The position numbers and the translations under genes are program-made. From assembly GCF_963853765.1 (NCBI RefSeq), contig NC_088862.1, forward strand, positions 1,488,001 to 1,552,000: a DNA stretch of 64,000 bases, in the 5' to 3' direction. Under the pieces are notes generated by a model, which saw nothing but the letters and a program-made list of their open reading frames with translations, had not been told where the DNA came from and made no database searches. Below are positions 553 through 16,517 of the stretch, in pieces. Position 1 is the first letter of the stretch; every line of letters begins with the position of its first letter. The stretch comes from Magallana gigas (Eukaryota).

Positions 553-2930
553 TCACCACACGAGATGGAAACTAGATTGGGACTCAACAACTTTTAGCTT
601 ACTTGGTAATAACTTTTCTGTCAATTTTGATAAGTACTCGCGTAATATAAGGAATTTACAGTACTTCTTTGACTCAAAGTCGAATAAGTCACACCCCACT
701 ACAGCATACGGTAGGTCTGGAACTGGTGTTGGTTTTAAGGATTCCGGTGGTTGCGAGTTCTGGAACGTTGCACACTTCTCACAGTCTTTAACAAGCTGCT
801 CGATCTGGGAGTTCATTCCCGGCCAGTACATCACTTCGCAGGCACGCTGTTTACATTTCACAATTCCGAGGTGAGACTTGTGTATTAGACTGAGCATATG
901 TGATCGAAGAGTAGGTGGAATCACTATGCGCATGCCTTTAAATATTACCCCATCCATTACAGAGAGTTCACTGCGAGATGTCCAGTAGTCCCGCACACTG
1001 ACTTGAGTTTCATTCTTTGTGTCAGGCCAACCATTTATGATAACAGTGTATAAACCGTGTAGCTCATTAAGGGTGCGCTCTCTGATATATTCTTGTCTTT
1101 CCCTGCTGACGAATAATAAGTCGAAAGCGTACATCAGCTATTTCAAGGTCTGGTTCATTGTTTGATAAGAAATGGTTTGTGGTCTTTGTAGACAGTGACT
1201 GGCTTGCCAACTATGTAGCAATGAAACATGGATGCTCCATGTACAACTGAGAGCATTTTCTTTTCAATTTGAGCGTATCGCAATGACACGGCCTTCCTGA
1301 ATGAGGATTGCCCCTAGTCCATCTTTAGAAGCATTACATTGTATTTCTATTGATTTGCTTACATTAAAGAGCGGTCGTACAAGAGGTTTTGAGTCGGTCA
1401 AAAATCTCTTGGTGTGTTTTATCCCATTGGAATGAAATGTCAGCTTTGAGAAGTTGTCTAAGAGGCGCGTCTATTTCACTCATATTTGGAATAAATTTGC
1501 AAAAGTATTGCACCAGTCCCAGGAATCTCCGCACAGCATCCTTGTTTGTGGGTGCTGGCATATTGCACACTGCTTTAATTTTCTCAGGATCTGGACTAAT
1601 GCCTTTGGAACTGATGATATGTCCTATGTAAGGTACTGATGTCTTGCGAACTCTGCATTTATTAAAGTTGAGGCGCAGATTGAATTCCGTCGCTCTCTTG
1701 ATTACTGCTTCAAGGATGTGATCATGGTGTTCCCGATCCCGGCCTGCAATTTAAATATCATCCATGATTGCGAATGCTCCTTCAATTCCTTCTAGCATTT
1801 GATCCATATTGCGTTGGTAAATTTCTGGGGCTGACTTTATGCCAAATGGGAGTCTCAGCAACGGAAACGACCAATTGGGGTATTGGAAGTCGTAAGGTAT
1901 GAAGATTTATTGTCAAGTTTAATTTGCATATAACCAGATTTGGCGTCAAGAACTCAAAATACTTTTGCACCAGGAATAGAACATGACACTTCCTCTACTG
2001 TATTCATGGGGTGGTGTTCTCTCTTAATGACCTCGTTAAGATCTTTAGGGTCAATACAAATTCTCACTTTGTTGTTCCTAAGGCTCACAACCACCGAACT
2101 TACCCATTTGGTAGGTTCTTCAACGGGTACAATGTATCCATCTGATTCCATTTTTCTCAGCCTTTCGATGATTCTTGGCTTTAACGATGCGGGCTGACGG
2201 CGCACTGGGTAAATCACACCTTTTGCATGTTCATCAATTTTGATGCTGTGTTCTCCTGGAAGAGTGGTACGGATTAGATCTTGGAAATCACTAAACTGTC
2301 CTAGCTGCACCGAATCACATTCAACAGTGTCCACATGCATAATGAGGTTAAGCTTTTCGGCTGTAGAACCAGCTATGATGTTTTCCTGCGAAACGTTTAC
2401 TACCTCAAACTTAGTTGTAATAGGTGTATCACCAATATGACTAGTGAGTGGTAAGTCAACGCAGAATTCAGGACAGGTTTTGTGGTTTGTGAATGAGCGC
2501 AGTATTTTATGTGACTTCTGCTCATTGCCGTGTAAGTCTGCTCTTATGTACTGTGACATGATGATAACGTTACATTTAGCTCCTGTGTCTATGCGGAATT
2601 CTAGAGGTCTGTCATGAACATACAGTGTAACGAGCCATTTATCTAACTTACGAGTGTCTGATCTGTCATCACTGGTAGAAAGAATATCTATCATGGCATC
2701 TTCATCACAGTCATCAGAATTGGATAAGTCTTCTGGTTCCAATGAGTACATCTTAGCCCGATTACGCTTCATACAGACTGATCTCCAATGGTCTGGTTTC
2801 TTACAGTAGTTACAAGTGGTACCGACTGCTGGATATTTGCTGTGGTTAGTATCAAATCCACAACGTGTGCAAGTATTTCTTATTTGTTTCAGACTTCTTC
2901 TGTTTTGCTCCAAGATCCTTGGATTAGTTC
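553..2930 (-). pseudogene. Decayed Ty3/Gypsy gag-pol fragment (double CCHC knuckle, protease, RT, RNase H, integrase N-terminus), broken by stops and frameshifts and truncated in the integrase core
   Basis: ORF 1954-2913 has CTRCG..H..(C)PAVGTTCNYCKKPDHWRSVC and the protease motif FRIDTGAKCNV, then RT start (PTKWVSSVVV..VRICIDPKDLN). An RT IMDDI motif lies near 1760, RNase H-region sequence at 1134-1570, and integrase HHCC (HKSHLGIVKCKQRAC..YWPGM..DCEKC) in ORF 553-1134. No LTRs found. Confidence 0.85.
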
Positions 2931-3712: not shown

Positions 3713-4284
3713 ACTATATATGATAAGAGTTAAATTTTGCCCCCATAATTCGCCATTTTTTAAGTGTTTCGGGTACAATAAAATGTTAACTAATTTTTTA
3801 GAAGAGTTGATATAAAATATATTTTTCATCTATTTATTTGATTTATTTGCACTCACTGGCAGTATATGACGTCAGAAGTGACGCCATTTCGCTAATTCAA
3901 TCAAACTCAGCCAAAAATTGACATTTTTCTTATCTATTTACGAATCGGAAATATAGAGCGCATGCTTGAACAAGGACAATTTTTTTGTCACTTATTAGTC
4001 TTGGCTAGATACATCTCTGATTAAAATATTTTATTTGTTCAAGAATGCACTCTATGTTTTCGGAAGGAAAAACTGCTTGAAAACAAGCTGTTTTACGCTA
4101 AAAATGCAAAAATGGCGGGAAAAGGTTGTCTTTACAATGTTATATTTCTAAATTGTGGGCACTTGAACCGAAATGAATATTATGTAAACACATCACATAC
4201 ATATCTGTACTAAGAAAACAAAGAATGATAGTAAATTGATGATGTTCATTTTAGGGGGCCATTTTAGGCCCTTATCATATATAG
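3713..4284. mobile_element. Non-autonomous TIR element (MITE), about 570 bp
   Basis: Imperfect inverted ends: actatatatgataagagttaaattttgcccc (3713) versus ggggccattttaggcccttatcatatatagt (ending 4284). Confidence 0.6.
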
Positions 4285-4989
4285 TCCAAATTTTGGTGCA
4301 GTTCCAATCCTGGGTTAAGATTTGATGTTTTAGTAAATTAAGCATTTTTCCATGGTATTTTTATATCATTTATATTAATAAATACATGTGCATTTATCTG
4401 TCTTTTACATGCCCTGTTTAAAAAGCTTCAAACCCCCTTCTCAATTTGTGCTTCTTTTCGCAGAATTTCAATTTTTTTGTGTCTTGGAAGTTGTTTCAGT
4501 TCCATTTTTGCATTTATCAAAAAACTATTTACAGTCCTTTTAAAATTTAGATTATGCAAATGAAAAGATATAAAATTAATCATACTCTGTTCCCTTTGGT
4601 ATACAGATGCATTCAAAGTGTACATGTACAGTAAGGCTTACCTGTAAAAAAAAAAATAGTTCCGGATAAATGTTGTCGAGGGGGTGTGTCCCCATACCAA
4701 GGTATGTTATACAATATAATAAATATTATCCTCTTATATCATTATGTTATATACAATAATTGCCTTTCTATGGGCTATTGTGCATCAGATTGACTTTGTT
4801 AAGAGGGCCGTGTTACCGAATAGATTTATCTCATTTGCTATAAAAAGATTTTCTTTCCATTTTGTGCTTTAATGAGCTTACGAGTTTTATTTACGTTTTT
4901 TGTTGATGATGATGTAGGTGCGTGTTAAACGTTACATTTAACGAGAAAGATCATCGGAAAGCGGTCACCGGTGTATTCTGAACAGTCTA

Positions 4990-5250
4990 AGAAAGAATTT
5001 AACAAACCAAAATACAAGACACTTATGATAAAAGTTTATAACATTATCTTCTTATATATGTGATAACACAAAATAGTTGGTAAATGTGAAAACATCCCAA
5101 CAATACAATAGTCTGCGCAAAAAGTGATGAAAAAAGAATTTAAAAAACCAAAATACAAGACACTTATGATAGAAGTTATAAAATTATCTTCTTGGATATT
5201 TATTAACACAAATAGTTGGTAAATGTACAAACATCCTTAAAATACAATAC
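4990..5250. repeat. Diverged tandem duplication, unit about 140 bp
   Basis: aagaattta..aaaccaaaatacaagacacttatgata..aaatagttggtaaatgt occurs twice, at about 4992 and about 5134. Confidence 0.75.
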
Positions 5251-5564
5251 TTTGCCAAAAAGTGACCTAATTTTGGCATCAATATAATTAGATACGAAAC
5301 AAACAATTATATCTGTTTTATTATGTGATTTTGCGGCACACTGGCGCATCTCAAAAAGGTTGCGTTCTAAAACGTGAATGGTACATGTATTATTGGTTAC
5401 AAATTTGTTGAGTTGTCAGCTTTATACCATGCAAGAATATTAAAAAAAACTAATATATTGATATGGACTGTTTTGCCTTAAATTACGTAATAATCTCTAA
5501 TGTAATATATCTCTTAATTGGATAATGACATTATATTTACAGATAATGAAAGCTTTCATATATA

Positions 5565-5822
5565 TGTTGTGTAGCCGAGAAACTACAAAACATATAGTTC
5601 AAATATCTGGTGTCTTACCTGACAATATGCGGCAGACAACAGACAATGGTAAAAATATATAAGGAAAAACAGGGTAACAGGTGTGGTGCGGTATACGGCA
5701 GGATCAGAACTGGAGCTCCAGTAGATTGGGGTGGACCATGTGACATCAGGGTAGACCAGGGTTAGAGGTCATACATAAAAATTAGCATACGTTGGGAGAA
5801 TACAGTACGTGTTTACACTACA
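5565..5822 (-). repeat. 3' LTR (258 bp)
   Basis: Matches 16260-16517 at 257 of 258 positions by eye (taaaaattag versus taaacattag). TG...CA termini. Confidence 0.97.
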
Positions 5823-5833
5823 CTCCTCCCCAT
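5823..5833 (-). other. Polypurine tract (PPT)
   Basis: Minus strand ATGGGGAGGAG directly precedes the TG of the 3' LTR. Confidence 0.9.
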
Positions 5834-6210
5834 TTTATAATGAAAAGACCAACGTATACTCTATCATACAATTATGGGAAAAAAGACCAATTTAAAGACC
5901 AACTTTATAGAAATATAATACCAACATATCCCTATCTTTTTAGCTCATATATAATGTATATATATATATATATATACACAGGTTTCCTCGCATAAATCTG
6001 GGCTGAAATTATCGGACCCTTAATGAAGCAGAGGAACACTTATAAAAACAGAGTAAACAATTATTATGTAGTGATAAATTCCACTCAAATTTGGACCGAA
6101 AAATATCCAGTCCTGGATCCAGCAGAAAAATACAAAATACATAACTATAGTGCATAGAGCTTACGACAGTTCTTCACAGTTTCATTGAGCAGATACCGCA
6201 CAGATATCTG

Positions 6211-8262
6211 TTACTTGGATGCAACTACGGTGGCCACGTCACCAATGAACGCCGGGGTATTTATGTATCCACCACCTGGCTTCATGTAGGGGGAATCTGT
6301 TTCCAGCAACATACGATTCATTGGGACTGCACGAAGTCCATCAATCTGGTCCGTACTGAAAGTCTCCACGGCACCTGTGAATCCAAAGTAAACATGTGAA
6401 AAACTGTTCATCCACTCCTTCACCAGCCTCGCATCGCCAGTAAAGCAATGAAGATGTATTGGTTGGTCAGGATCACAAGACGTATGCAATATCTGCATAC
6501 ACCGTGCATGCACATCCATCCCAATCCTGTCAGCGGGAGTTCCACGCAAGTGCAGAACGAGAACTTTGTCCTTTCGGCTAAGAGTTAACACTTGACATAG
6601 AACATCTTCCTGTCGCCTCCATAACTTTACTGGCACAGTTCGGTCCAACCCAACCTCTCCCAGAGCCACTACATGAGGACGGTTTAGTAGTTCTTTCATA
6701 TGGAGAAATCTGTCTCTGGAGAATTCCTCTATGTGCTTGGGGTGCACTCCCACAGCCACTCCCCAAGGTCGCTCAACAGACACTATCTCTGGATGGGTGG
6801 AGGGTTCACTATAAACGATCACTCCACCTGCGACAGATACGTCAAGTTGAGGATGTTGATTTCCAGATAAACTATAGGAAATGAGGTCATCTACAGATTT
6901 TCCTGATGATTTCTTCCAAATACGGAAACTAGTCCGATCCAAGTGGAAATGACTATCGAAGGCTTCATTCACTGTGATGATTTTTTCGTTGCAAACTTCT
7001 ACGTCTGAACCATAGCTAACATCAATCACGGTGAATTCGTCCTCAGTTGAAGAGTCTACCACTGGAACTTGACTGTCCTCTGTGTTAGTAGGATGTTTGA
7101 TATCACTTCTAACGCGCCCGTCTACACGAAATTCTTCGCGTTGAATAGGTGGTAACAGTGACAACAACACTACCAGGCATCTCCAATGGAAAAGTGCTGC
7201 GGGGGAATTAACAGGTGACACAGTAAATCCCTCTGGTGGTTCTGCCCATCCTTGAGGTACACTAAATTTCCTCATACAGGCGATGGTGTCCGGATGTACA
7301 CTAGTGTTCTTTGGAATCCCACCAGACTGATTCACATAATTAACAGCGCTATACACATCAGCATTTTGTCCCAAGGCACTTATCACCAAGGATATCAACG
7401 ATGAGTACTGGAGCTGGCATAACACAGACTCATCAATAGAACGAATAGGCTTAATGTCACTGAAAATTCTAGGAAGATGCTGGCGCTGGACATGACGCTT
7501 GATCTTTTTCTCCCTCTTAACACAATTTGGGAATGGACACAGCTGAGCAAGATGAGACGACGGTTTAGTTAGAACTGTTATGGATAAATTATGATCCATT
7601 CGAGCGCGCTTCGATCCGACATCCTGGGTACTTTGCTTTGCCTCCACATGACGTGCTGGGTGCATACGTTTACCAGGGTTGTGGATAACTGGTATGGGCT
7701 CAGGGAAAGTAGGTTCAGGTTCCCGTACATTCACCATCAATCCAGTTGGGGCTGAGATACCACATTCTTGATCCGCCGTGTCATGATCCGCAGAGGAATC
7801 TGCTTCACCATGCACTTCGGAAGAGTCCGAGATCTCCATTGAGCGGGCGTTTGAATCTGCTGCATTGGTACGCACTACTTCCAGATTTGGGTTCGTCTTA
7901 AGACGGATATCCACACACATTGAGGAAGTAGCTTCAGCAGTATGCGACGTTTTGGTTCTTCTGCTTCTGTGGTTACCTAGCAGGGAAGGAAGGTTATCGT
8001 CCACCCAACGGTCTGAACACAAAATGGTGGCAGTCTCCCGTCTGGTCGTCTCAATCCATCTACTATCTCCCAGGTCTTTGGCGAGTCTATACTGTCCTTT
8101 GAGTACCTCGCAAATAGTGGTATGTGATGTTCCATCACTGATGAGTCCAAGGTCATACACAAATGTTCTTGGATCAACAAGACTCCTCAAGGATGTTTTC
8201 CTCCTGACAAAGTCCAAGTAATGTTCACCTCTTTCCTGACGAATAGTAGATCTCCTGTACAT
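6211..8262 (-). CDS. tatD: Retrotransposon ORF3, 683 aa: unknown N-terminal domain, atypical C2H2-like finger and C-terminal TatD-family metallo-nuclease
   Basis: TatD motifs occur in the correct order: FDSHFHLD, GVHPKH, ALGEVGLD, VLHLR, LHCFTG, YFGFTG, LLETDSPY. The reading frame continues past the TAA for 22 TatD-like residues to a TAG at 6145. Confidence 0.9.
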   Translation of the reverse strand: MYRRSTIRQERGEHYLDFVRRKTSLRSLVDPRTFVYDLGLISDGTSHTTICEVLKGQYRLAKDLGDSRWIETTRRETATILCSDRWVDDNLPSLLGNHRSRRTKTSHTAEATSSMCVDIRLKTNPNLEVVRTNAADSNARSMEISDSSEVHGEADSSADHDTADQECGISAPTGLMVNVREPEPTFPEPIPVIHNPGKRMHPARHVEAKQSTQDVGSKRARMDHNLSITVLTKPSSHLAQLCPFPNCVKREKKIKRHVQRQHLPRIFSDIKPIRSIDESVLCQLQYSSLISLVISALGQNADVYSAVNYVNQSGGIPKNTSVHPDTIACMRKFSVPQGWAEPPEGFTVSPVNSPAALFHWRCLVVLLSLLPPIQREEFRVDGRVRSDIKHPTNTEDSQVPVVDSSTEDEFTVIDVSYGSDVEVCNEKIITVNEAFDSHFHLDRTSFRIWKKSSGKSVDDLISYSLSGNQHPQLDVSVAGGVIVYSEPSTHPEIVSVERPWGVAVGVHPKHIEEFSRDRFLHMKELLNRPHVVALGEVGLDRTVPVKLWRRQEDVLCQVLTLSRKDKVLVLHLRGTPADRIGMDVHARCMQILHTSCDPDQPIHLHCFTGDARLVKEWMNSFSHVYFGFTGAVETFSTDQIDGLRAVPMNRMLLETDSPYMKPGGGYINTPAFIGDVATVVASK

Positions 8263-8653
8263 TATGCACTATTTAAAGTTTACACAATCAAAATACTAAG
8301 AAAGTAATGAAATAATTCTAACTACCACACTATATTACCGAGTATGATAAAAGGTAGTTAAGTTATATTATGAAAAATGACCTAAATGATAATCTATAAA
8401 TGTGACATAACCCTGGTCTATAATATACTTTGGGTACAGTATACTTTCTCCTCCACTGAAATAAAAGATAAGGCATATTAAGCACTCCAAACTTTCAGTT
8501 TGCAAATGACTAAGCATATAACTTAAACTGAAGATCGGAACCAAAGATTATGATTAAAAACATACCAAAGTAATTTAACACAAAAATATATTAAAAGATT
8601 AAGTCATATATTTACAGATTTTACCACACGAATACCTCAGATATCACTGGCAC

Positions 8654-11600
8654 TTAATGCTCGCACTTTGGACACAAATAAAATGCTAACTGCTCTGCGA
8701 ATTCTTTACTTACTTTGACGCAGGAACCATGAAACCAATCGCGACATTCATCACATTGAATCATGAATGAACCCGTGTCTGGCCCGCGACAGATACAAAA
8801 CTGAGCGTTGTTAGTATCCACCGGAACTTTATTGACATGTTTTTGGATCCATTCCGGAAGGTGACGGTCTCTGCAGATCTTCATACGATCATGATTCATG
8901 GTTATAATTTTTCCGCGCAGTTTGACCTTGTATAAATACGCAGATAATTTCTCCACAACCACTCCAGGCCCTTTCCAAGATGGACTGAGTTTTCTGCACT
9001 TACCTTTAACTGTCGCAGTATCAAGTACGTAAACAGCATCTCCGACTTTATAAGGATGTTCCAAAGTCCGGAGATCATAGTCACGTTTCATGATGTTCTG
9101 CGTAGTTTTAAGGACATCTCTGGCGGTCTCATGTGCTGTGGTAATGGAGTTGGTCAAGTTAGCAAGATATTCATCCTGAGGTTGCTCTTCCCTCTGCCCT
9201 GGAAACACCAAATCTACTGGTTGAGTTGTTTCTCGACCGAGCATCAACATATTAGGGGTATAGCCCGTGCTCCGATTTACAGAAGACCGAAGGGCTGCTG
9301 CTATTTGTGGAATATACTCATCCCACTCTCTTGGTGTTTTGGAGACATAACATCTAACAGCATCCATCAGAGTTCTGTTAAACCTTTCGACTTGCCCATT
9401 TGCTGATGCTCTGAAAGGAGTCGTTCTGGTTTTATGGATTTCGAGCATCTTACACATTTTAGTGAAGAGTTCACTAGTGAAGTTGGTTCCCTGGTCTGTA
9501 AAAATCTGGAGAGGATAACCAAAGCGTGTAAAAAACTCATTAATGGCCGCACGAGCTGTTACTTCTGCCGTTTGCGCTGGTAATGGTATACACTCTACCC
9601 ATTTGGTAAACTGGTCAACCATCATCAGAATGTAACCATTGTGGTTTTTTGTAACAGGTAGAGGGCCCAAGAAATCCAAATGTACTCTTTCCATTGGCAC
9701 TCCTGCATGGAACTGGGTCATGTTACATCGAGCATGTCTTGTAGGTTTTTTATTCCTATTACATACTGCACAGGAGGTAACATAATTTTGAATATCCAAC
9801 GTCATAGAGTACCAATAGAACCGCTCCTTAATTCGACTCAAAGTCCTTACCACTCCCTGGTGACCCGCAGCGGGAATATCATGACACAGAGCCATGGCTT
9901 CTACTTGCATGGTTCCTGGGAGTACGAGGACTTTACCAGTATCTTCAGTTTTCCACAGCATGCCTTGTTCATCCAGTGTGAATAATTCTTTGTTAATCCA
10001 CAATGCTTTAGCTGCCTTAGACATAAGAAAAAGCTCATTATCAGGTTTAACTCCCGAGTCTAACCAATCTATCAAAATTTTTAGGTTAGTATCTTTATGC
10101 TGAGCCTCTTTAATGTCATTTGTGGAGTAATTCTGCAGCCACAAGTCATGGTTAACAAGCCTTACTTTGATTTTGCTTTCACACTGGGAGTCTTTATTCT
10201 CGGATGATTTAAGAACAGAAGCAAGAGGAATAACATCATCTACATCATTCAGGAACTCCCCCCAATTTCGGTGGGCACGTTGACAATAGTGACATCCCCC
10301 ACACGCCAGATCTTGCAGTTTAAAATCTGCTCGGTAGAAGGGACACTCATTGTCATATTTTATCCTGGATAATGCGTCAGCATTCAAATGTTTCTTGCCT
10401 TCCCTATGCTGAATCTTCATGTTGTATTGACTCAATTCTTCCATCCATCTAGCAAGTTGACCTTCTGGGTAACGGAAGTTGAGTAGCCATTGTAGACTAC
10501 TGTGATCCGTACGAATTGTAAACGGTCTTCCAAGCAGATAATAACGATAATACCTGGTAAAAGTCACTACTGCTAGCAACTCTTTGCGGGTTGTGCAATA
10601 TCGTTTTTGTTCAGGAAGAAGGCCAATACTAGCATAGGAAATTGTTCTTTCTTGACCATCTTGAATTTGCAGTAATTCTGCTCCCAGGGCATATTCAGAG
10701 GCATCTGTGTCAAGGATGAAGTGACCTTCTTTAGTGGGCAATGTAAGAACAGGAGCACTTGTGAGAGCCAGTTTTACTTTATCAAAAGCCGACTGTTGCT
10801 CATCACCCCAGTTAAACCTATTCTTACCTGTAACTGCGTACAAAGGTGCGATCATCTCAGCAAAGTCCTTAATAAAGTTCCTATGGTAGTTGGCAAACCC
10901 ACAGAAGCGTTCTACATCTTTGGTACAAAGGGGTATAGGCCAATTGTTCATTGTGTCTATATAACTTTGTCCAATACCCAACCCACTTCTGTTTACTGTG
11001 CGTCCTAGGAACTCTACTTCTTGTTTGAACAAAACACACTTCTTTGGTTTTAACTTTAGTCCAAATGACCTAAATCTTTTAAACACATCTGTAATGTTGT
11101 TGAGGTGTTCCTTAAAATCTTTGCCCAAAACAAGAATATCATCAAGGAATGCTAAGACGGTCTTCCAATGTAATCCCCGCAATACCAGATTCATTACTCT
11201 CGAGTATGTGCTTGGTGCATTACATAAACCAAACCCCATTCGGTTAAACTGGAACGTCCCATACTTGGTTATAAACGCAGTTTTTTCCTTATCCGAATTC
11301 TTGACTTTAATCTGTAAATAGGCCCAGTTTGCATCTAGTTTAGAAAACCAAAGATTCCCCGTCAGTGTATCTAGGCATTCGTCTACCAAAGGTAGAGGAA
11401 ATACATCTTTCTTGGTCACAGCATTTAATGCCCTGTAGTCTATACACCAACGTAGGGTTCCATCTTTTTTTCTAACTAGTACTGGCGCTGAAGCCCATTC
11501 AGAGGTTGAAGGTTCGATTACTCCTGCACCTAGCAATTTGTTGAGGTGTTTTTCTTCTTCATCCACATAGCAAACTGGTGTTCTTCGCAACCGTTGTTTA

Positions 11601-12595
11601 ATTGGCCTGGAATCTCCCGTATCTATGCTATGTTCTATTGTGGTGAAATTTCCTAGGTCAAATTCATTTGTTGCGAATACATCAGAGTATGAATGAAGAA
11701 CTGCTTGAAGTAGGTCCCTCTCTTCTGAGGAAAGGTGTTCTGAAGACCTAGCCAAAAGATCTTTCAAATGATCTGGTATCTCAACATCTGAGGAATCTGT
11801 GGTGGATTCTACTTTCTGGATTTTCACTGTCTCTGGATCACTGTCTGGCAAGACTTCATGTATAGAGTGAGCAAATCCCACTACTTGACCCTGCTTTAAC
11901 TTAACTTGTTTATTGGTCAAGTTAATCAGACAGAGAACAGGCGTTGATCCTCCTGTATGTAATGATCGTGGAGATAAGATAGAATTAAACTCTATTGGTT
12001 CAATAACGTAATCGCATGACATGACTGCACTACAAGGCAACCTCAGCACAGAACAAGGTGGCACTATTGCATTATTTGAAACTTTAACTTCTGCCACTTG
12101 TAAATTGCTGCAGCTGTCTATAGAACAACTCATGCGAAAACGCCCATGACCAATCTCGAGTTTACCATTACTCATATTGATGATTGCTCCATGCTGATAA
12201 AGAAAATCCAGTCCCAGTAACATATCATCTTCCACTGGTGCTACGTATACTTCATTTCCTGGAAATGTTTGCGACCCGATAACTATACTTACCGGCCCAA
12301 CCTTGTAACCAGACATCTTAAGATCCCGTCCTGCTGTATGTAAGATTACTTTACTCAAGGTAGGTGGTTTTACCTTGAGAGATTTATAGAGCCCGTCTGA
12401 GATTATGGTCACTTGAGCTGCGGTATCAATAATCGCTGCCACAGGTACCCCATTAATACTCAGATTAACTTTGATATTTGACGAGGACCTCATTCGTCTG
12501 ATAAATATCTCATTGGCCGGTCTTGTAACGTCTGCTAGGCCGCTGATATCAGGGATCGAAGAATGGCCTAATGCCCCGACCCCTTGTCGTTTCCC
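8654..12595 (-). CDS. pol: Pol polyprotein (aspartic protease, RT, RNase H, integrase, C-terminal PHD finger), probably made as Gag-Pol by -1 frameshift
   Basis: Protease [18 protein letters not shown], RNase H ILDTDAS and TDHSSL, integrase H-H-C-C plus [22 protein letters not shown], a WKGP motif, and the C4HC3 PHD [33 protein letters not shown]. The frame is open from the slippery site at 12595 (first Met at 12493). Confidence 0.96.
   Translation of the reverse strand, partial: [1313 protein letters not shown]
12535..12595 (-). promoter_or_regulatory. -1 programmed ribosomal frameshift signal: G GGA AAC heptamer plus H-type pseudoknot
   Basis: The heptamer (12589-12595) is in the gag frame, and a -1 slip enters the open pol frame. 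Stem 1 is AGGGGUCGGGG/CUUCGAUCCCU. Loop UAGGCC pairs with downstream GGCCUA. Confidence 0.85.
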
Positions 12596-15498
12596 TCTGG
12601 CTTAGCACCGTCTTCGAAGGACACTGATTTTGAAGGTTTATTCAATGCCTTAAGACTTGGACAAGCATTTCGGAAATGTCCAGTCCCTCCACAATGAAAA
12701 CATCTCAGATCTGGAGAGGGAGAGCGTGATGGAGACCTTGTCCGCTCAAAATTCCTCTGAGGACTCCGATTAAATCTGAATCTTTGTGGGCTTGCAGGCC
12801 TCTCTCTCACCAAAGCCTCCATCTTTTTCATAACGGCTTCAATACTACTGGCCAAAGATCCCATTTGATCCTCTAATTTGGTCATCCTTTGAGTAACTCC
12901 TTCTCCTTGAGATCTAGGAGGTCTTACTTGAGCGACGGTAGCGTGAGAACATGCAGATAATTCTGCATCTTCACCACAAACCGTAACTTCTCTTATATCC
13001 CTCCTTCCCTTTCCATAGATGGCATAATGATTATATTGGAAACTCTTGAGATTGTCAATAGTTTCCTCTATAGTCAACGGATGGAGATTAATGGCGTATT
13101 GCCCAGCCTCTTTGTCTGTGCATCCATGACATATACGCTTAATCGCTTGTTTAAGCATATAGTCCTCAGGTAGACCTTCATAAGCTCGAAGAGCCAGCTG
13201 AAAAACACGATCAGCCCACTCTTCCAGTCTTTCTCCAGACTCCTGAGACAAAGAATTGATTTTAAGCTGTGCAGTCTCAGGGATTTCTTTATAGCCAAAC
13301 CTTTTCTCCATTTTTTGCATAAGGTGACCAAACCCAATGTCTCCGTCCTGTGAGATGATAGTGGCGTAATATTCACTTGCCCTACCCTCCAAACACCATC
13401 CCAAGTAATCTCGTGATTCTTGGGGCCTCCAATTTCTGATCTCAGAAAACCGAGTAAACTTTTGTTGGAAAGCCTTCCAAGAATCTAAACCATCAAATTT
13501 CAATGTTTTTGGTAATGTATCTATGCGGTCAGCTCTTCTGGGTTGCTGGTTTATGTTTGCCTCAACTGGCTGTTGTGGTTGTGGTGGTTGTTGTATGTTT
13601 TGTTCTTGTTGTTGTGCATGTGGAATTGGTGGTTGTACAATATTTTGCACATGCATGTTTGCTGGTCTCTGAGGTTGCTGCTGTTGATGATGCAAGATGT
13701 GAGGTGGGAATGGCGTATGTGGTGCGGGTGTTTGTGGCTGAGGCTGAGCTGCATATGCTTGTGGTACATGTATTTGTTGTTGCTGTGCATGTAACTGCGG
13801 CATAGTTTGTACATTAAGTGGTATGTGTTGTGGCATTTGAATCATGTTTGTTGCCTGTTGTTGCAGTTGCTGCTGAGCAGGCACTGCCAGTTGGTGCACC
13901 TGATTTTGAGTTGGCTGATGTTGTACTGTAAATTGTGGTACATGATTTTGTGCCAATTGTTGTTGAAATGCATTTTGAGGTTGCTGAAATGCATGTTGTG
14001 GTTGCTGAAACGCATGTGGTGGTTGCTGAAATGCATGTTGTGGTTGCTGAAATGCATGTTGTGGTTGCTGAAATGCATGTTGTGGTTGCGGAAATGCATG
14101 TTGTGGTTGCGGAAATGCAGTGTTTGTGTGCCATTGTGTTGGTTGATGATATTGAATGGCATTGCTCAGAGCTTGATTTTGTGAATGTGCCACATTGTAT
14201 GTGTTCTGATGAATGTCATGTTGCTGTGGCAGTAAAAACTGGTTTGGATTGAACTGAACTTGCGGATATGATGGTTGCATAACATTGAGGTTAACACCCT
14301 GACCGCTAAACGGTAGATAACCGCTTTGGGGTAAAGGTGTACCTACAGTAGATGGTAACATGCTAGGAATTGCACCCATGCCATTAACTGGTAAATAACC
14401 GCTTTGTGGCATAGTTGCAGCCGTGGCATATGATACCATATTGGGATTTACAAACTGAGCATTTGGTACAGATGTACTGTTGTTTGGTTGCACATTATTA
14501 ATCATACCCTGAGATGCGGGTATGCCAGTGTAAGATGGTACCGACCCCTGGACACCAACCAGTAGGGGATTGCCAGATGTCTGTGACGGTAACCCACTAA
14601 CACTTGCATAACTTGATGTGACTTGATTTGGTAAGATTAAACCATGAGTACTTGACGGCATGTTTCCGACCTGTGTCTGGGAGTACGTACCCATAGCCAT
14701 AGACGCAACTTGTTCAGTTGGCATCAAACCATGTGCACCCGCCGGTAATATATAACCGCCCTGTGCCGCGGAATGAACACCAACTGATACATTTGTGTCA
14801 AATATTTCAGATTTGACAGGGACACCTGGTGTAGTACATACCCCAGATGACTCTGACCCAGTGATCTGAGAATGTTGAGTTGACATTTTGGGGAAAGGTG
14901 CACTTGGAATGCTACCATATGTAAATATGCCTGTAGTAGGTTGCATAGTCGACCCTTGAGGCACACCGGTATAGAGTGTACAAGGAACATTATTTAACAT
15001 AGTGTTTTCTGGTTCACTCTTAAACCCTGTACTCGTCGACACAGCAGGCCAGTTAAGTGATAATGTTTTTGGCCTAACATCCTTTGCCCCACTTTTCTCC
15101 CTGTTCTTGGTATCTATCATCTCTACCACCTGTGAACTGAGTGCACTAGGAGTAGTAGGAACAATTATTTCCTTTGATACATGCACCCCATTCACAGGCT
15201 CAAGAGATGTTAGAACTTCACTTTCTGGGAAAGATGGTGATAACTGCAAGTTATCCATCTGATTTTGAAGGGAAAAATTCAAATCTGGGTTTTCTTCATA
15301 GTTTATTACACCTGCATCTTCATCTGCAATCTTCGCGTGTTTAACTTGTTGTAATTCCTGGAGATTACGGATGTTTCCGGACGTTTCACGAAAAGCCACG
15401 ATGTTTTTGGCTACTGCAGGGCCCACTCCTCTGATCGTTTGGAGTGTATCGACATCAGCAAAATTAATACGAACGGCGTTTTCGCCACCTTGTGCCAT
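12568..15498 (-). CDS. gag: Gag, 976 aa: N-terminal ComEA-like helix-hairpin-helix, long Gln/Pro-rich region, capsid-like domain, CCHC knuckle
   Basis: N-terminus VRINFADVDTLQTIRGVGPAVAKNIVAFRETSGNIRNLQELQQVK, capsid-like KFDGLDSWKAFQQKF..LEGRASEYY, and zinc knuckle CFHCGGTGHFRNAC. Confidence 0.93.
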   Translation of the reverse strand: MAQGGENAVRINFADVDTLQTIRGVGPAVAKNIVAFRETSGNIRNLQELQQVKHAKIADEDAGVINYEENPDLNFSLQNQMDNLQLSPSFPESEVLTSLEPVNGVHVSKEIIVPTTPSALSSQVVEMIDTKNREKSGAKDVRPKTLSLNWPAVSTSTGFKSEPENTMLNNVPCTLYTGVPQGSTMQPTTGIFTYGSIPSAPFPKMSTQHSQITGSESSGVCTTPGVPVKSEIFDTNVSVGVHSAAQGGYILPAGAHGLMPTEQVASMAMGTYSQTQVGNMPSSTHGLILPNQVTSSYASVSGLPSQTSGNPLLVGVQGSVPSYTGIPASQGMINNVQPNNSTSVPNAQFVNPNMVSYATAATMPQSGYLPVNGMGAIPSMLPSTVGTPLPQSGYLPFSGQGVNLNVMQPSYPQVQFNPNQFLLPQQHDIHQNTYNVAHSQNQALSNAIQYHQPTQWHTNTAFPQPQHAFPQPQHAFQQPQHAFQQPQHAFQQPPHAFQQPQHAFQQPQNAFQQQLAQNHVPQFTVQHQPTQNQVHQLAVPAQQQLQQQATNMIQMPQHIPLNVQTMPQLHAQQQQIHVPQAYAAQPQPQTPAPHTPFPPHILHHQQQQPQRPANMHVQNIVQPPIPHAQQQEQNIQQPPQPQQPVEANINQQPRRADRIDTLPKTLKFDGLDSWKAFQQKFTRFSEIRNWRPQESRDYLGWCLEGRASEYYATIISQDGDIGFGHLMQKMEKRFGYKEIPETAQLKINSLSQESGERLEEWADRVFQLALRAYEGLPEDYMLKQAIKRICHGCTDKEAGQYAINLHPLTIEETIDNLKSFQYNHYAIYGKGRRDIREVTVCGEDAELSACSHATVAQVRPPRSQGEGVTQRMTKLEDQMGSLASSIEAVMKKMEALVRERPASPQRFRFNRSPQRNFERTRSPSRSPSPDLRCFHCGGTGHFRNACPSLKALNKPSKSVSFEDGAKPEGNDKGSGH
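13960..14120 (-). repeat. 21-bp coding tandem repeat in gag (PQHAFQQ x about 7-8)
   Basis: gttgctgaaatgcatgttgtg units on the plus strand translate as PQHAF(P/Q)Q. Confidence 0.9.
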
Positions 15499-16246
15499 TT
15501 TGTGATATCTGATGGTTTACAATGTTTTATAATAGATAGCAATAGCTAATAACAAATGAAAACGATTTGAGTAATCTTTGGAATAAATTTTTGAAAAATT
15601 TTTAAGTCAAAAAAGTCGAAAATAAAATTGCCAAAAAATTAGAGAATTATAAAACGTATTGACGTACAATAATGCACTTCAAATAATTGAAAATGTATAA
15701 TCTATTCGCAAAAACTTAGAATCTAAATGAAAAACAAGTACTAATAAATGAAAACCTCGAAAAAATTCAAAACCGGAAGTTATAAACAGTTGTTTACATT
15801 TAACCGGAAAGGTATTCCCCCGATACGTCACAAAATGGCGCCAAATATTTATAAAACAAAATGGCGTCCGTCAAAATGACATGAGGTTTGACAATAATAC
15901 GAATTTTGCGAAATTACTTAAGGAATAGAATATTTACTAAATTTTCGTCGATAGTACGTTTAACAACGCAAGAAACCGACAAATTACAAATGAAATTATA
16001 AGTGAGTTCTGTACACCACGTTATGTATATCACCACGTGCTATAACTGTCAGCACGTCGTGACAAAAATAGAAATACACTAATAATATGAACACAGTCAA
16101 ATTGTAGGAATAACGCACCTGACGCTTATAATAAACGTCCAATGCAAACAAATATTCCTAAGACGACAATGTGATACAAAAAATCCAACCGGCAATATGT
16201 TATCACCGTGTGGTCAAAAATATACAAAGATAAACAAAAATGTTTA

Positions 16247-16258
16247 CCGGCGACGCCA
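16247..16258 (-). other. Primer-binding site
   Basis: Minus strand TGGCGTCGCCGG begins 1 nt after the CA of the 5' LTR. TGG is complementary to the tRNA CCA end. The primer tRNA is not identified (a G discriminator would fit Ser). Confidence 0.8.
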
Positions 16259-16259
16259 A

Positions 16260-16517
16260 TGTTGTGTAGCCGAGAAACTACAAAACATATAGTTCAAATA
16301 TCTGGTGTCTTACCTGACAATATGCGGCAGACAACAGACAATGGTAAAAATATATAAGGAAAAACAGGGTAACAGGTGTGGTGCGGTATACGGCAGGATC
16401 AGAACTGGAGCTCCAGTAGATTGGGGTGGACCATGTGACATCAGGGTAGACCAGGGTTAGAGGTCATACATAAACATTAGCATACGTTGGGAGAATACAG
16501 TACGTGTTTACACTACA
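16260..16517 (-). repeat. 5' LTR (258 bp)
   Basis: Direct repeat of 5565-5822. Confidence 0.97.

What the first reader, a model, noticed from the sequence alone, without database searches (positions are those of the whole stretch)
5565..16517. Young Gypsy LTR retrotransposon carrying three DNA/chromatin modules: HhH-Gag, PHD-integrase and a TatD nuclease ORF
Seen: all three modules lie between two near-identical LTRs, so they travel with the element. Known: standard Gypsy elements have gag-pol, sometimes with env or a chromodomain. I do not recall a described lineage combining ComEA-type HhH, a PHD reader and a TatD nuclease. Inference: this could be a coordinated kit for cDNA binding, targeting of active chromatin, and nucleolytic processing or immune evasion. 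This is the best candidate for an undescribed system in the window.
Basis: partly seen in the sequence, partly recalled or inferred. Interest (0 to 1): 0.92.

Follow-up and report, generated by a model that had tools for sequence, protein, structure and literature searches.

The report
Oyster Gypsy retrotransposon carrying TatD nuclease
A recently inserted oyster Gypsy-type retrotransposon really does carry a DNA-binding HhH domain on Gag, a histone-reader PHD finger on its integrase and a third gene ending in a TatD nuclease, and it belongs to an old, apparently undescribed lineage of marine-invertebrate elements in which the nuclease gene is the constant feature.

Summary
Window 5565-16517 (minus strand) is a 10,953-bp Ty3/Gypsy element with 258/259-nt LTRs differing at one base, plus PBS and PPT. 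Its three genes are HhH-Gag, PR-RT-RNH-IN-PHD Pol, and an ORF3 ending in a TatD domain with all metal-binding motifs.

It is not a one-off capture. The same layout occurs in Saccostrea, Pinctada, Argopecten, Mytilus, Mercenaria, Haliotis, the hemichordate Ptychodera and many metagenome contigs. In loci found through the integrase alone, 17 of 21 PHD-bearing elements with enough downstream sequence have the TatD ORF3.

RT and TatD distances co-vary (Mantel r=0.81), which argues for one ancestral acquisition. All three modules show fewer non-synonymous than synonymous differences.

The "coordinated kit" reading is only partly supported. A sister group has TatD ORF3 but no PHD, and HhH is patchy.

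The PHD is closest to the PHF2/PHF8/BPTF/TAF3 type. ORF3 also has two confidently modelled modules with no PDB match.

I infer promoter-chromatin targeting by the integrase and 3'-end nucleic-acid processing by ORF3.

No paper in the searchable library describes this; Repbase and Dfam could not be checked. I rate it a new variant of a known kind.

The parts
16260..16517 (-). 5' LTR (TG...CA, 258 nt)
   Evidence: Direct repeat pair. 1 mismatch in 259. Ends read.
16247..16258 (-). Primer-binding-site-like sequence TGGCGTCGCCGG, one base after the 5' LTR
   Evidence: Read. TTGGCG(T/C)(C/T)G is conserved at the same place in Pinctada, Argopecten, Mercenaria and Haliotis relatives. The matching tRNA was not identified.
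12568..15498 (-). ORF1, Gag (976 aa), intact
   Evidence: ORF list and Pfam.
15337..15480 (-). Gag N-terminal HhH_3 (ComEA/EEPD1-type) module, aa 7-54
   Evidence: Pfam HHH_3 E 5.6e-12. PDB ComEA 8dfk E 2.9e-6 and human EEPD1 9yi2 E 3.8e-6. Hairpin Gly and hydrophobic positions are invariant in 6 relatives.
13519..15318 (-). Gag Q/P-rich low-complexity linker (aa ~61-660). It includes a 21-nt x 7.9 tandem array at 13959-14124 that encodes heptad-like Q/P/H/A/F repeats.
   Evidence: Translation. TRF. Composition is Q 16% and P 12% overall, and Q 30% in aa 431-660. pN/pS 0.66, the least constrained part.
13186..13440 (-). Gag capsid-like region (PNMA / Retrotrans_gag-like), aa 687-771
   Evidence: Pfam PNMA E 2.6e-4 in the window copy. 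Retrotrans_gag is at or above threshold in relatives.
12655..12705 (-). Gag CCHC zinc knuckle, aa 932-948
   Evidence: Pfam zf-CCHC.
12589..12595 (-). G GGA AAC heptamer in the gag frame, inside the 34-nt gag/pol overlap. Pol is in the -1 frame, so this is a candidate programmed -1 frameshift site.
   Evidence: Frames and heptamer. The downstream hairpin is not better than shuffles (z -1.5).
8654..12493 (-). ORF2, Pol (1279 aa from the first ATG; the open frame begins at 12601), intact. Domains: PR 12200-12469, RT 10997-11476, RNase H 10424-10810, IN Zn 9746-9919, IN core 9410-9697.
   Evidence: ORF list, Pfam, open frame.
8663..8797 (-). PHD finger at the integrase C-terminus, aa 1233-1277
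   Evidence: Pfam PHD E 5.7e-10. The closest solved structures are PHF2, PHF8, KDM7, DIDO1, BPTF, Spp1/CFP1 and TAF3 (E 3e-15 to 3e-9). C4HC3 ligands plus Met, Trp and Tyr positions are invariant across the family.
6145..8262 (-). ORF3 gene, first base to the family's stop. One premature in-frame stop in this copy. The product has three folded modules joined by disordered linkers.
   Evidence: ORF list, family alignment, AlphaFold models.
7978..8241 (-). ORF3 N-terminal helical module, aa 8-95, fold unassigned
   Evidence: pLDDT 82-95. No PDB match. It also occurs alone, sometimes repeated, in long proteins with no Pfam domain.
7105..7551 (-). ORF3 zinc-finger plus helical module, aa 238-386. 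It has C-x4-C-x9-H-x4-H and invariant NSP..L..WR positions. Fold unassigned.
   Evidence: Invariant C242, C247, H257, H262, N352, S353, P354, L357, W360 and R361. pLDDT 81-96. No PDB match. Nearly always found with a C-terminal TatD.
6148..6969 (-). ORF3 TatD nuclease domain (from aa 432)
   Evidence: Pfam TatD_DNase E 9.5e-35. E. coli YcfH 1yix E 2.5e-14, with HxH, GE.GLD, H.R, LHCFT and ETDSPY motifs aligned. Foldseek TM 0.74 to 1yix. Ligand columns are invariant or nearly so.
5823..5836 (-). Polypurine tract AAAATGGGGAGGAG, abutting the 3' LTR
   Evidence: Read. AAAA(C/T)GGGGAGGA(G/A) is conserved in Saccostrea, Pinctada, Argopecten and Mercenaria relatives.
5565..5822 (-). 3' LTR

Best explanation
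This is a recently inserted member of an old lineage of Ty3/Gypsy LTR retrotransposons of marine invertebrates (molluscs, at least one hemichordate, and unidentified organisms in marine metagenomes).

Shown:
- It has the canonical layout LTR-PBS-gag-(-1 frame)-pol-ORF3-PPT-LTR.
- The lineage's constant extra feature is a non-envelope ORF3. It joins a conserved CCHH zinc-finger/helical module to a TatD-family metal-dependent nuclease with a complete active-site motif set.
- A large sub-group, including this copy, also ends its integrase in a PHD finger of the PHF2/PHF8/BPTF/TAF3 type.
- Part of that sub-group starts Gag with a ComEA/EEPD1-type HhH domain followed by a long Q/P-rich disordered linker.

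Inferred mechanism:
- Gag and Gag-Pol are made by -1 frameshifting at G GGA AAC.
- The PHD finger tethers the integrase to H3K4-methylated promoter-proximal nucleosomes. This would play the role that chromodomains play for chromoviruses, but pointed at active rather than silent chromatin.
- The HhH module gives Gag sequence-independent double-stranded-DNA or chromatin contact.
- ORF3 is brought to nucleic acid by its zinc-finger module and uses TatD chemistry (3'-5' exonuclease on single-stranded DNA or RNA ends in characterised TatD enzymes). It would trim reverse-transcription or integration intermediates, or remove surplus cDNA or RNA:DNA hybrid by-products.

The modules are separately gained or lost add-ons, not an indivisible kit.
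For: Anatomy.

Lineage: complete or decayed elements with the same order of parts occur in these sources.
- Saccostrea (L001) and Pinctada (L002), both with identical LTRs and three open ORFs.
- Argopecten (L003), Mytilus (L004), Mercenaria (L005), Haliotis (L006) and Ptychodera (L008).
- A JGI metagenome contig with the full triad (L009).
-.

Unbiased co-occurrence:
- Of integrase-ascertained loci with PHD and at least 1.5 kb downstream, 17 of 21 have the ORF3 match.
- Of those with no detectable PHD, 8 of 11 have it.
- Pfam confirms TatD and the absence of PHD in open pols of L038 and L042.
- PHD-less elements cluster together on an RT-RNH neighbour-joining tree.

Single acquisition: RT and TatD distances correlate, Mantel r 0.81, with 0 of 2000 permutations as high.

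Constraint (window versus Saccostrea, pN/pS): RT 0.08, IN 0.12, PHD 0.17, ORF3 N-module 0.23, TatD 0.24, ZnF module 0.29, HhH 0.44, against 0.66-0.67 in disordered linkers.

TatD competence: motifs align to YcfH, ligand columns are invariant, and the fold matches at TM 0.74.

PHD type: the nearest solved fingers are PHF2, PHF8, KDM7, DIDO1, BPTF, Spp1/CFP1 and TAF3. By my recollection these are H3K4me3 readers. C4HC3, Met, Trp and an aromatic residue before the first Cys are conserved.

Not an envelope gene: no signal peptide, no Pfam envelope hit, and the one marginally hydrophobic stretch lies inside a confidently modelled helical bundle.

Precedent: bdelloid rotifer LTR elements carry non-envelope enzymatic ORF3s, including a DEDDy 3'-5' exonuclease (PMC5408684).
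Against: - No functional data exist. Nuclease activity, substrate, histone-mark specificity and DNA binding are all inferred from family resemblance.
- In the alignment to PHF2/PHF8 one of the positions that I recall as lining the methyl-lysine cage falls in a gap. H3K4me3 reading is therefore likely but not assured.
- This copy's ORF3 carries one premature stop, so this particular insertion may make a slightly shortened TatD domain.
- How ORF3 is expressed (subgenomic or spliced RNA, or reinitiation) is unknown.
- Synonymous sites are saturated between species, so true dN/dS could not be estimated for most modules.
- The tree is unrooted neighbour-joining without support values, so gain versus loss of PHD is open.
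- 4 of 21 PHD-bearing loci with room downstream showed no ORF3 match. These may be decay, divergence or real loss.
- Repbase, Dfam and GyDB could not be consulted, so a catalogued family name may exist.
Confidence: 0.6

Rival explanations
1. ORF3's nuclease acts mainly against the host's nucleic-acid sensing rather than in replication. It would degrade surplus cytosolic cDNA or RNA:DNA hybrids so that they do not trigger innate immunity, as the host exonuclease TREX1 does for HIV-1 DNA (my recollection of the literature).
For: Characterised TatD enzymes are 3'-5' exonucleases on single-stranded DNA or RNA (established knowledge). A second, unrelated 3'-5' exonuclease fold (DEDDy) was independently taken up as ORF3 by rotifer LTR elements (PMC5408684), which suggests a general benefit of such an activity. 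ORF3 is a separate protein rather than part of Pol. It carries its own putative nucleic-acid-binding module.
Against: Nothing in the sequence separates this from a role in processing replication or integration intermediates. Conserved basic patches in the linker and zinc-finger region would suit a nuclear protein as well. There are no expression or localisation data.
Confidence: 0.25
2. The PHD finger does not steer integration. It serves another purpose, such as recruiting transcription machinery to the provirus or binding unmodified H3 or a non-histone partner.
For: One cage position is not matched in the alignment to PHF2/PHF8. A sister group lacks PHD altogether yet persists, so PHD is dispensable for the lineage.
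Against: Its position at the very C-terminus of the integrase, after the SH3-like/GPY-F-like region, is where chromoviruses carry their targeting chromodomain. Its conservation (pN/pS 0.17; invariant Met, Trp and Tyr) matches a reader pocket.
Confidence: 0.15
3. ORF3 is a one-off capture of a host gene, a nested unrelated element or an assembly chimera in this copy.
For: None found.
Against: The same ORF3 sits in the same place, between pol and the PPT/3' LTR, in at least eight taxa and dozens of metagenome contigs. Independent short-read assemblies carry ORF2 and ORF3 together. RT and TatD co-diverge.
Confidence: 0.02
4. ORF3 is an envelope-like gene that allows cell-to-cell or host-to-host transfer, as in errantiviruses.
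For: It occupies the position of env, downstream of pol. One 19-residue window reaches Kyte-Doolittle 1.68.
Against: There is no signal peptide (the first 30 residues have mean hydropathy -1.13) and no envelope or fusion-protein family hit. The hydrophobic stretch lies within a high-confidence helical bundle. The C-terminal half is a cytosolic or nuclear-type TIM-barrel nuclease.
Confidence: 0.02

Closest known systems
Chromoviruses (Ty3/Gypsy elements with a chromodomain at the integrase C-terminus)
   Same: Both are Ty3/Gypsy elements with the same pol order. Both have a small histone-mark reader fused to the extreme C-terminus of the integrase, after the SH3-like region. The presumed logic is the same, tethering of integration to a chromatin state (described in PMC6673714).
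   Different: This predicts active-promoter rather than heterochromatin targeting. Chromoviruses have no TatD ORF3 or HhH-Gag.
Bdelloid rotifer Juno/Vesta LTR retrotransposons with enzymatic ORF3 (DEDDy exonuclease, GDSL esterase); PMC5408684
   Same: Both are LTR retrotransposons whose third ORF is not an envelope gene. It is an enzyme with intact catalytic residues, in one case a 3'-5' exonuclease acting on RNA or single-stranded DNA ends. The function in the element's cycle is unknown.
   Different: The nuclease fold is unrelated (DnaQ-like DEDDy versus TatD TIM barrel). The host phylum differs. There is no PHD or HhH. The rotifer ORF3s are shared with Penelope-like elements, whereas here ORF3 co-diverges with RT.
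PHD fingers in other retrotransposons (CR1-like LINEs, Kapitonov & Jurka 2003; Perez-Alegre et al. 2005), as cited in PMC6673714
   Same: A PHD finger encoded by a retroelement, thought to read histone tails.
   Different: These belong to different element classes or kingdoms, as I recall. I found no description of a PHD-ending integrase in metazoan Gypsy elements in the searchable library.
Bacterial TatD-family nucleases YcfH/TatD/YjjV and eukaryotic TATDN1-3
   Same: Same Pfam family, TIM-barrel fold and metal-ligand motifs. E. coli YcfH is the nearest solved structure.
   Different: Here the domain is the C-terminal third of a larger retroelement protein with two extra modules. It is only 20-28% identical to solved TatDs. 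Its nearest sequence relatives are all other invertebrate copies, element-borne where I could check. The origin (host TATDN-like gene or bacterial) is unresolved.
Host-domain captures by retrotransposons: CopiaMBD in arthropods (PMC6673714), m6A demethylase in orchid Ty3/Gypsy (PMC9289625)
   Same: A cellular chromatin or nucleic-acid domain fixed in a retrotransposon lineage and conserved.
   Different: The domains differ. Here up to three separate additions occur in one element, with nested distributions.
Errantiviruses and other env-bearing Gypsy elements
   Same: Three-ORF layout with the third ORF after pol.
   Different: ORF3 has no envelope features.

Membership tests
Ty3/Gypsy (Metaviridae) LTR retrotransposon | Two LTRs in direct orientation with TG...CA ends | tested here: met
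   (258 nt, 1 mismatch in the 259-nt repeat).
Ty3/Gypsy (Metaviridae) LTR retrotransposon | PBS next to the 5' LTR and polypurine tract next to the 3' LTR | tested here: met
   Both are conserved across relatives.
Ty3/Gypsy (Metaviridae) LTR retrotransposon | Pol domain order PR-RT-RNase H-IN (integrase last) | tested here: met
   Pfam positions. Same order in relatives.
Ty3/Gypsy (Metaviridae) LTR retrotransposon | Gag with capsid-like domain and CCHC knuckle | tested here: met
   Ty3_capsid and Retrotrans_gag hits in relatives.
Ty3/Gypsy (Metaviridae) LTR retrotransposon | Short target-site duplication | tested here: inconclusive
   The window flanks are GATA and TATA (3 of 4). Clean 4-bp duplications occur in Pinctada (TTAG) and Mercenaria (GTAT) relatives.
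Ty3/Gypsy (Metaviridae) LTR retrotransposon | Placement of RT within a named Gypsy clade (Mag, CsRn1, Gmr1 and others) | not testable with these tools
   No GyDB or Repbase reference sequences were available. The mollusc survey PMC6238403 classifies by RT/RNase H only and mentions no ORF3 or PHD.
Chromovirus | Chromodomain at the integrase C-terminus | tested here: not met
   No chromodomain hit. A PHD finger occupies that position.
Errantivirus-like (env-bearing) Gypsy | ORF3 encodes a membrane glycoprotein (signal peptide, transmembrane anchor, fusion machinery) | tested here: not met
TatD nuclease family (PF01026) | Profile match above the curated threshold | tested here: met
   120.6 bits against a cut-off of 27.
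TatD nuclease family (PF01026) | TIM-barrel fold | tested here: met
   Foldseek matches to 17 TatD-family chains at E 8e-11 to 5e-7. TM 0.74 to 1yix.
TatD nuclease family (PF01026) | Metal-binding His/Glu/Asp motif set | tested here: met
   HxH, GE.GLD, H.R, LHCFT and ETDSPY align to YcfH. H438, H440, E536, H571 and E654 are invariant, and H603, H605 and D656 are at least 90% conserved in 15 relatives.
TatD nuclease family (PF01026) | Nuclease activity | not testable with these tools
   Sequence and model only.
PHD finger, H3K4me3-reader type | C4HC3 zinc-ligand pattern | tested here: met
   All eight ligands are present in the window copy and in six of seven aligned relatives. One ligand is lost in the degraded Ptychodera copy.
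PHD finger, H3K4me3-reader type | Nearest characterised relatives are methyl-lysine readers | tested here: met
   PHF2, PHF8, KDM7, DIDO1, BPTF, Spp1/CFP1 and TAF3 lead the list. Their specificity is from my knowledge of the literature.
PHD finger, H3K4me3-reader type | Complete methyl-lysine cage | tested here: inconclusive
   The Trp, the Met and the aromatic residue before the first Cys are kept. One Tyr position of PHF2/PHF8 falls in a gap. Cage assignment is from memory of the published structures.
HhH_3 / ComEA-type helix-hairpin-helix | Profile match above threshold and conserved hairpin glycine | tested here: met
   46 bits against a cut-off of 27. ComEA and EEPD1 matches. G26 is invariant.
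HhH_3 / ComEA-type helix-hairpin-helix | Double-stranded DNA binding | not testable with these tools
   Inference from the family.
Rotifer-type LTR elements with enzymatic ORF3 (Juno/Vesta) | ORF3 is a DEDDy exonuclease or GDSL esterase | tested here: not met
   ORF3 is TatD. This is an analogy of design only.

The most novel reading that the evidence does not exclude
A phylum-spanning clade of Gypsy retrotransposons has carried its own TatD 3'-5' exonuclease for a very long time, attached to a previously unseen zinc-finger/helical nucleic-acid-recognition module. It would manage its reverse-transcription products, whether by trimming ends or by destroying immunostimulatory cDNA or hybrids. 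This would be convergent with the DEDDy exonuclease ORF3 of rotifer elements. A sub-clade then added an H3K4me3-reading PHD finger to its integrase, giving a natural paired comparison of chromatin-guided against unguided integration within one lineage.
Probability: 0.3. Interest if true: 0.8.

Novelty: new variant of a known kind. Interest (0 to 1): 0.62.

Why it matters
Retrotransposons rarely fix extra protein domains. Each well-documented case (chromodomains, MBD, methyltransferases, demethylases) has shown how mobile elements read or manipulate host chromatin and defences.

Here one lineage offers three such additions with nested distributions:
- A self-encoded TatD nuclease gene conserved across molluscs and a hemichordate.
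- A PHD reader on the integrase that predicts integration into active-promoter chromatin. That is the opposite preference to chromoviruses.
- A DNA-binding HhH on Gag.

Because sister elements with and without PHD both exist, insertion-site preference can be compared descriptively in existing genomes.

A second, unrelated exonuclease fold used as ORF3 by LTR elements suggests that 3'-end nucleic-acid processing is a recurrent need of these elements. That bears on how retroelements avoid nucleic-acid sensing.

The two ORF3 modules with confident models but no PDB match are candidates for new nucleic-acid- or protein-binding folds.

There is also a practical point for annotation. Proteins of this family are currently labelled 'TATDN2', 'YcfH-like', 'BPTF' or bacterial 'TatD family hydrolase' in invertebrate genomes and symbiont MAGs.

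Tried and rejected
- **dN/dS:** Formal estimates between species were not possible. Synonymous sites were saturated (pS 0.62-0.91, mostly beyond the Jukes-Cantor limit), so I report pN/pS instead.
- **Fold of the ORF3 N-terminal modules:** A separate model of aa 1-400 was confident but gave no PDB match (best E 5.2). The BFVD viral library returned only a giant-virus TatD-like protein. Long disordered linkers in the model may have lowered sensitivity.
- **Rooting the RT tree:** I tried the unrelated Gypsy fragment elsewhere in the window as outgroup. No stop-free match of sufficient length was obtained, so the tree is unrooted.
- **Context look-ups:** P0012, P0233 and P0208 found no record. 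The N-helical-only proteins and the Nucella pol remain without context.
- **Frameshift stimulator:** A hairpin begins a few bases after the heptamer, but its energy is not distinguishable from shuffles (z -1.5).
- **Primer tRNA:** The only tRNA gene in the window is tRNA-Ser(AGA). I did not match it to the PBS.
- **Origin of the TatD domain:** Bacterial YcfH is the closest solved structure and TATDN1 is much weaker. No TATDN2 structure appeared among the PDB matches, and all close sequence relatives are invertebrate copies. I leave this open.
- **Sea urchin locus L007:** It shows a TatD match without any pol nearby. It may be a host gene or a remnant and was not resolved.
- **Literature:** Seven full-text searches found no description of TatD in an LTR element, HhH-Gag or a PHD-integrase in a metazoan Gypsy element.

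- In my private reasoning I began to recall a short motif of a human PHD-finger protein from memory.
- Entry 2 also gives a wrong gene end (6142; the correct last base is 6145).
- In my reasoning I also read the frame beyond that stop.

Full report
**1. What is in the window**

Two direct repeats of 259 nt lie at 5564-5822 and 16259-16517. A direct count gives one mismatch. With TG...CA ends they bound a 10,953-bp element at 5565-16517, which reads on the minus strand.

A PBS-like TGGCGTCGCCGG lies one base after the 5' LTR, and a purine tract AAAATGGGGAGGAG abuts the 3' LTR.

Three long ORFs fill the interior: gag 12568-15498, pol 8654-12493, and ORF3 from 8262 downward. Gag and pol overlap by 34 nt with pol in the -1 frame. 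The overlap contains the heptamer G GGA AAC in the gag frame. A hairpin follows it but is not better than shuffled controls.

The 4-bp flanks, GATA and TATA, match at 3 of 4 positions.

Break count for this copy: gag 0, pol 0, ORF3 one premature in-frame stop relative to most members of its 90% cluster.

**2. The three modules are real**

Pfam results:
- Gag: HHH_3 at aa 7-54 (E 5.6e-12), a PNMA/retrotransposon-gag-like capsid region and a CCHC knuckle.
- Pol: PR, RT, RNase H, integrase Zn and core domains, and PHD at aa 1233-1277 (E 5.7e-10).
- ORF3: TatD_DNase (E 9.5e-35).

Between the HhH and the capsid region Gag has about 600 residues of Q/P-rich low-complexity sequence. This includes a 21-nt x 7.9 tandem array.

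TatD domain:
- It aligns to E. coli YcfH (1yix, E 2.5e-14) with the HxH, GE.GLD, H.R, LHCFT and ETDSPY motifs in register.
- Those columns are invariant or nearly so in 15 relatives.
- The AlphaFold model superposes on TatD-family structures, with TM 0.74 to 1yix.

PHD finger:
- It is closest to the fingers of PHF2, PHF8, KDM7, DIDO1, BPTF, Spp1/CFP1 and TAF3 (E 3e-15 to 3e-9). From my knowledge of the literature these are H3K4me3 readers.
- C4HC3, a Met, a Trp and an aromatic residue before the first Cys are conserved across the family.
- One Tyr position of PHF2/PHF8 falls in a gap.

HhH module: it matches ComEA (8dfk, E 2.9e-6) and, equally well, the HhH repeats of human EEPD1 (9yi2, E 3.8e-6).

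**3. ORF3 is more than TatD**

The family alignment and two AlphaFold models show three folded modules joined by disordered linkers:
- A helical module at aa 8-95.
- A module at aa 238-386 with an invariant C-x4-C-x9-H-x4-H motif and invariant NSP..L..WR positions.
- The TatD barrel.

The first two modules are confidently modelled (block pLDDT 81-96) but have no significant match in the PDB (best E 5.2) or in BFVD.

An exhaustive search with aa 1-400 found 211 representative clusters. The zinc-finger/helical module nearly always comes with a C-terminal TatD: 7 of the 8 long proteins tested that carry it. The N-helical module also occurs alone, sometimes repeated, in long proteins without Pfam domains.

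ORF3 has no signal peptide and no convincing membrane segment. It is not an envelope gene.

**4. Host and relatives**

The exact ORF3 protein is in an NCBI genome on a 37-Mb contig. Its 90% cluster holds Crassostrea/Magallana gigas and angulata proteins and many read-assembly contigs. The host is therefore an oyster.

Full-length ORF3 relatives occur in Saccostrea, Pinctada and Argopecten. Their contexts are as follows.

| Locus | Organism | LTRs | State |
|---|---|---|---|
| L001 | Saccostrea cucullata | identical | three open ORFs; HhH and PHD present |
| L002 | Pinctada imbricata | identical | three open ORFs; HhH and PHD present |
| L003 | Argopecten irradians | 98% | gag in 3 frame pieces, pol in 4, ORF3 open; HhH and PHD present |

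TatD-domain hits led to further decayed copies with pol, including the PHD region, followed by ORF3:
- Mytilus coruscus (L004): many breaks and no LTR pair found.
- Mercenaria mercenaria (L005): identical LTRs, an internal rearrangement, PHD present, weak HhH.
- Haliotis rubra (L006).
- The hemichordate Ptychodera flava (L008): 96% LTRs, and all ORF3 modules and PHD recognisable.

A JGI metagenome contig (L009) has the full triad in open frames, with ORF3 only 29% identical.

The sea-urchin locus L007 has a TatD match with no pol nearby.

LTR starts, the PPT and the PBS are conserved across the family. Two relatives show clean 4-bp duplications.

**5. An unbiased co-occurrence test**

The loci above were found through ORF3, so I also fetched 72 metagenome loci using only an integrase-PHD alignment.

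- Among those with a detectable PHD and at least 1.5 kb downstream, 17 of 21 have an ORF3 match on the same strand.
- Among more divergent loci with no detectable PHD, 8 of 11 have one.
- Pfam confirms open PR-RT-RNH-IN pols without PHD, followed by TatD ORFs, in L038 and L042, and a TatD ORF in L044.
- On an unrooted neighbour-joining tree of RT-RNase H, the PHD-less elements form one group apart from the PHD-bearing ones. Most apparent absences of ORF3 on that tree are contigs that end too early.
- RT and TatD distances are strongly correlated (Mantel r 0.81; 0 of 2000 permutations as high; 13 elements). This points to one ancestral acquisition followed by co-inheritance.
- HhH is patchier. 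It is present in oysters, Pinctada, Argopecten, L009, L014 and L071, and weak in Mercenaria. It is absent from an open 656-aa Gag in L015 and from Haliotis.

**6. Constraint**

Between the window and the Saccostrea element, synonymous sites are saturated. Non-synonymous differences are much rarer than synonymous ones in every folded module.

| Module | pN/pS (window vs Saccostrea) |
|---|---|
| RT | 0.08 |
| IN | 0.12 |
| PHD | 0.17 |
| Capsid-NC | 0.22 |
| ORF3 N-helical module | 0.23 |
| TatD | 0.24 (dN/dS 0.10 where computable) |
| ZnF/helical module | 0.29 |
| HhH | 0.44 |
| Disordered linkers | 0.66-0.67 |

**7. Interpretation**

Shown: this is a recently inserted Ty3/Gypsy element of a lineage whose constant extra is a ZnF-TatD ORF3. 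PHD-integrase and HhH-Gag are nested additions.

Inferred:
- Gag-Pol is made by -1 frameshifting.
- The PHD tethers the integrase to H3K4-methylated promoter chromatin. The chromodomain of chromoviruses is the model, with the opposite chromatin preference.
- HhH gives Gag sequence-independent DNA or chromatin contact.
- ORF3 trims 3' ends of reverse-transcription or integration intermediates, or removes surplus cDNA or hybrids.

The closest published analogue is the non-envelope enzymatic ORF3 of bdelloid LTR elements, including a DEDDy 3'-5' exonuclease (PMC5408684). PHD fingers in retrotransposons in general are known (PMC6673714).

I found no paper describing TatD in an LTR element, HhH-Gag or a PHD-ending integrase in a metazoan Gypsy element. 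The mollusc LTR survey classified elements by RT/RNase H alone. Repbase, Dfam and GyDB could not be consulted.

**8. Verdict**

It is a conserved lineage and not a one-off, but the modules are not an obligatory three-part kit, and their functions remain inference.
- I rate it a new variant of a known kind, with interest 0.62.

Noticed in passing
window 1370-2352 (-), with ORFs 553-1134 (-) and 1954-2913 (-): A fragment of a second, unrelated Gypsy-type pol (28-31% identical to this element's RT region, in two frame pieces) lies upstream of the element.
   Followed up: partly
window 4989-5261: Two copies of a roughly 140-nt tandem unit (83-94% identical) sit just outside the 3' LTR. The element is inserted in AT-rich, repeat-rich sequence (GC 31% in 4001-6000).
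   Followed up: no
window 30507-30580 (-): A tRNA-Ser(AGA) gene, the only tRNA in the window. It was not compared with the element's PBS.
   Followed up: no
window 24499-25323 (+) and 42687-43433 (-): Two further ORFs of 274 and 248 aa were not examined.
   Followed up: no
proteins P0073, P0074, P0089, P0114, P0119, P0121, P0129, P0206: TatD and PHD-integrase proteins of this retroelement family are deposited as bacterial 'TatD family hydrolase' or 'DDE-type integrase' in MAGs of Candidatus Thiodiazotropha and Sedimenticola. The contigs are short (1.7-4 kb). These are most likely host-clam DNA binned into symbiont genomes.
   Followed up: no
proteins P0203, P0070, P0098, P0134, P0146 and others: Genome annotations name members of this family 'BPTF' (a Mytilus pol fragment with the PHD finger), 'TATDN2', 'TATDN3', 'YcfH-like' or 'HI_0454-like'. 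These are probably transposon genes mistaken for host genes.
   Followed up: partly
proteins P0233, P0277, P0297, P0324, P0326: The ORF3 N-terminal helical module occurs, sometimes 4-5 times in tandem, in proteins of 700-1900 aa. The four scanned with Pfam (P0233, P0297, P0324, P0326) have no Pfam domain and no TatD. Their nature and hosts are unknown.
   Followed up: partly
L005 5354-6378 (-): The Mercenaria element has identical LTRs, but an inverted fragment of ORF3 lies where PR-RT-RNase H should be. This is an internal rearrangement.
   Followed up: no
L009 6996-7499; L003 4551-5102: Relatives carry their own in-frame tandem arrays (84-nt units in ORF3 of L009; 12/24-nt units in gag of L003). 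Repeat expansion in the disordered linkers is a family habit.
   Followed up: no
L007 10940-11578: The Strongylocentrotus purpuratus locus has a TatD domain of this subtype (36% identity) with no pol or gag within 10 kb, next to an MBOAT gene. It may be a domesticated or orphaned copy.
   Followed up: partly
window 5960-5990 (-), between ORF3 and the PPT: A (TA)n microsatellite lies in the element's 3' untranslated region.
   Followed up: no
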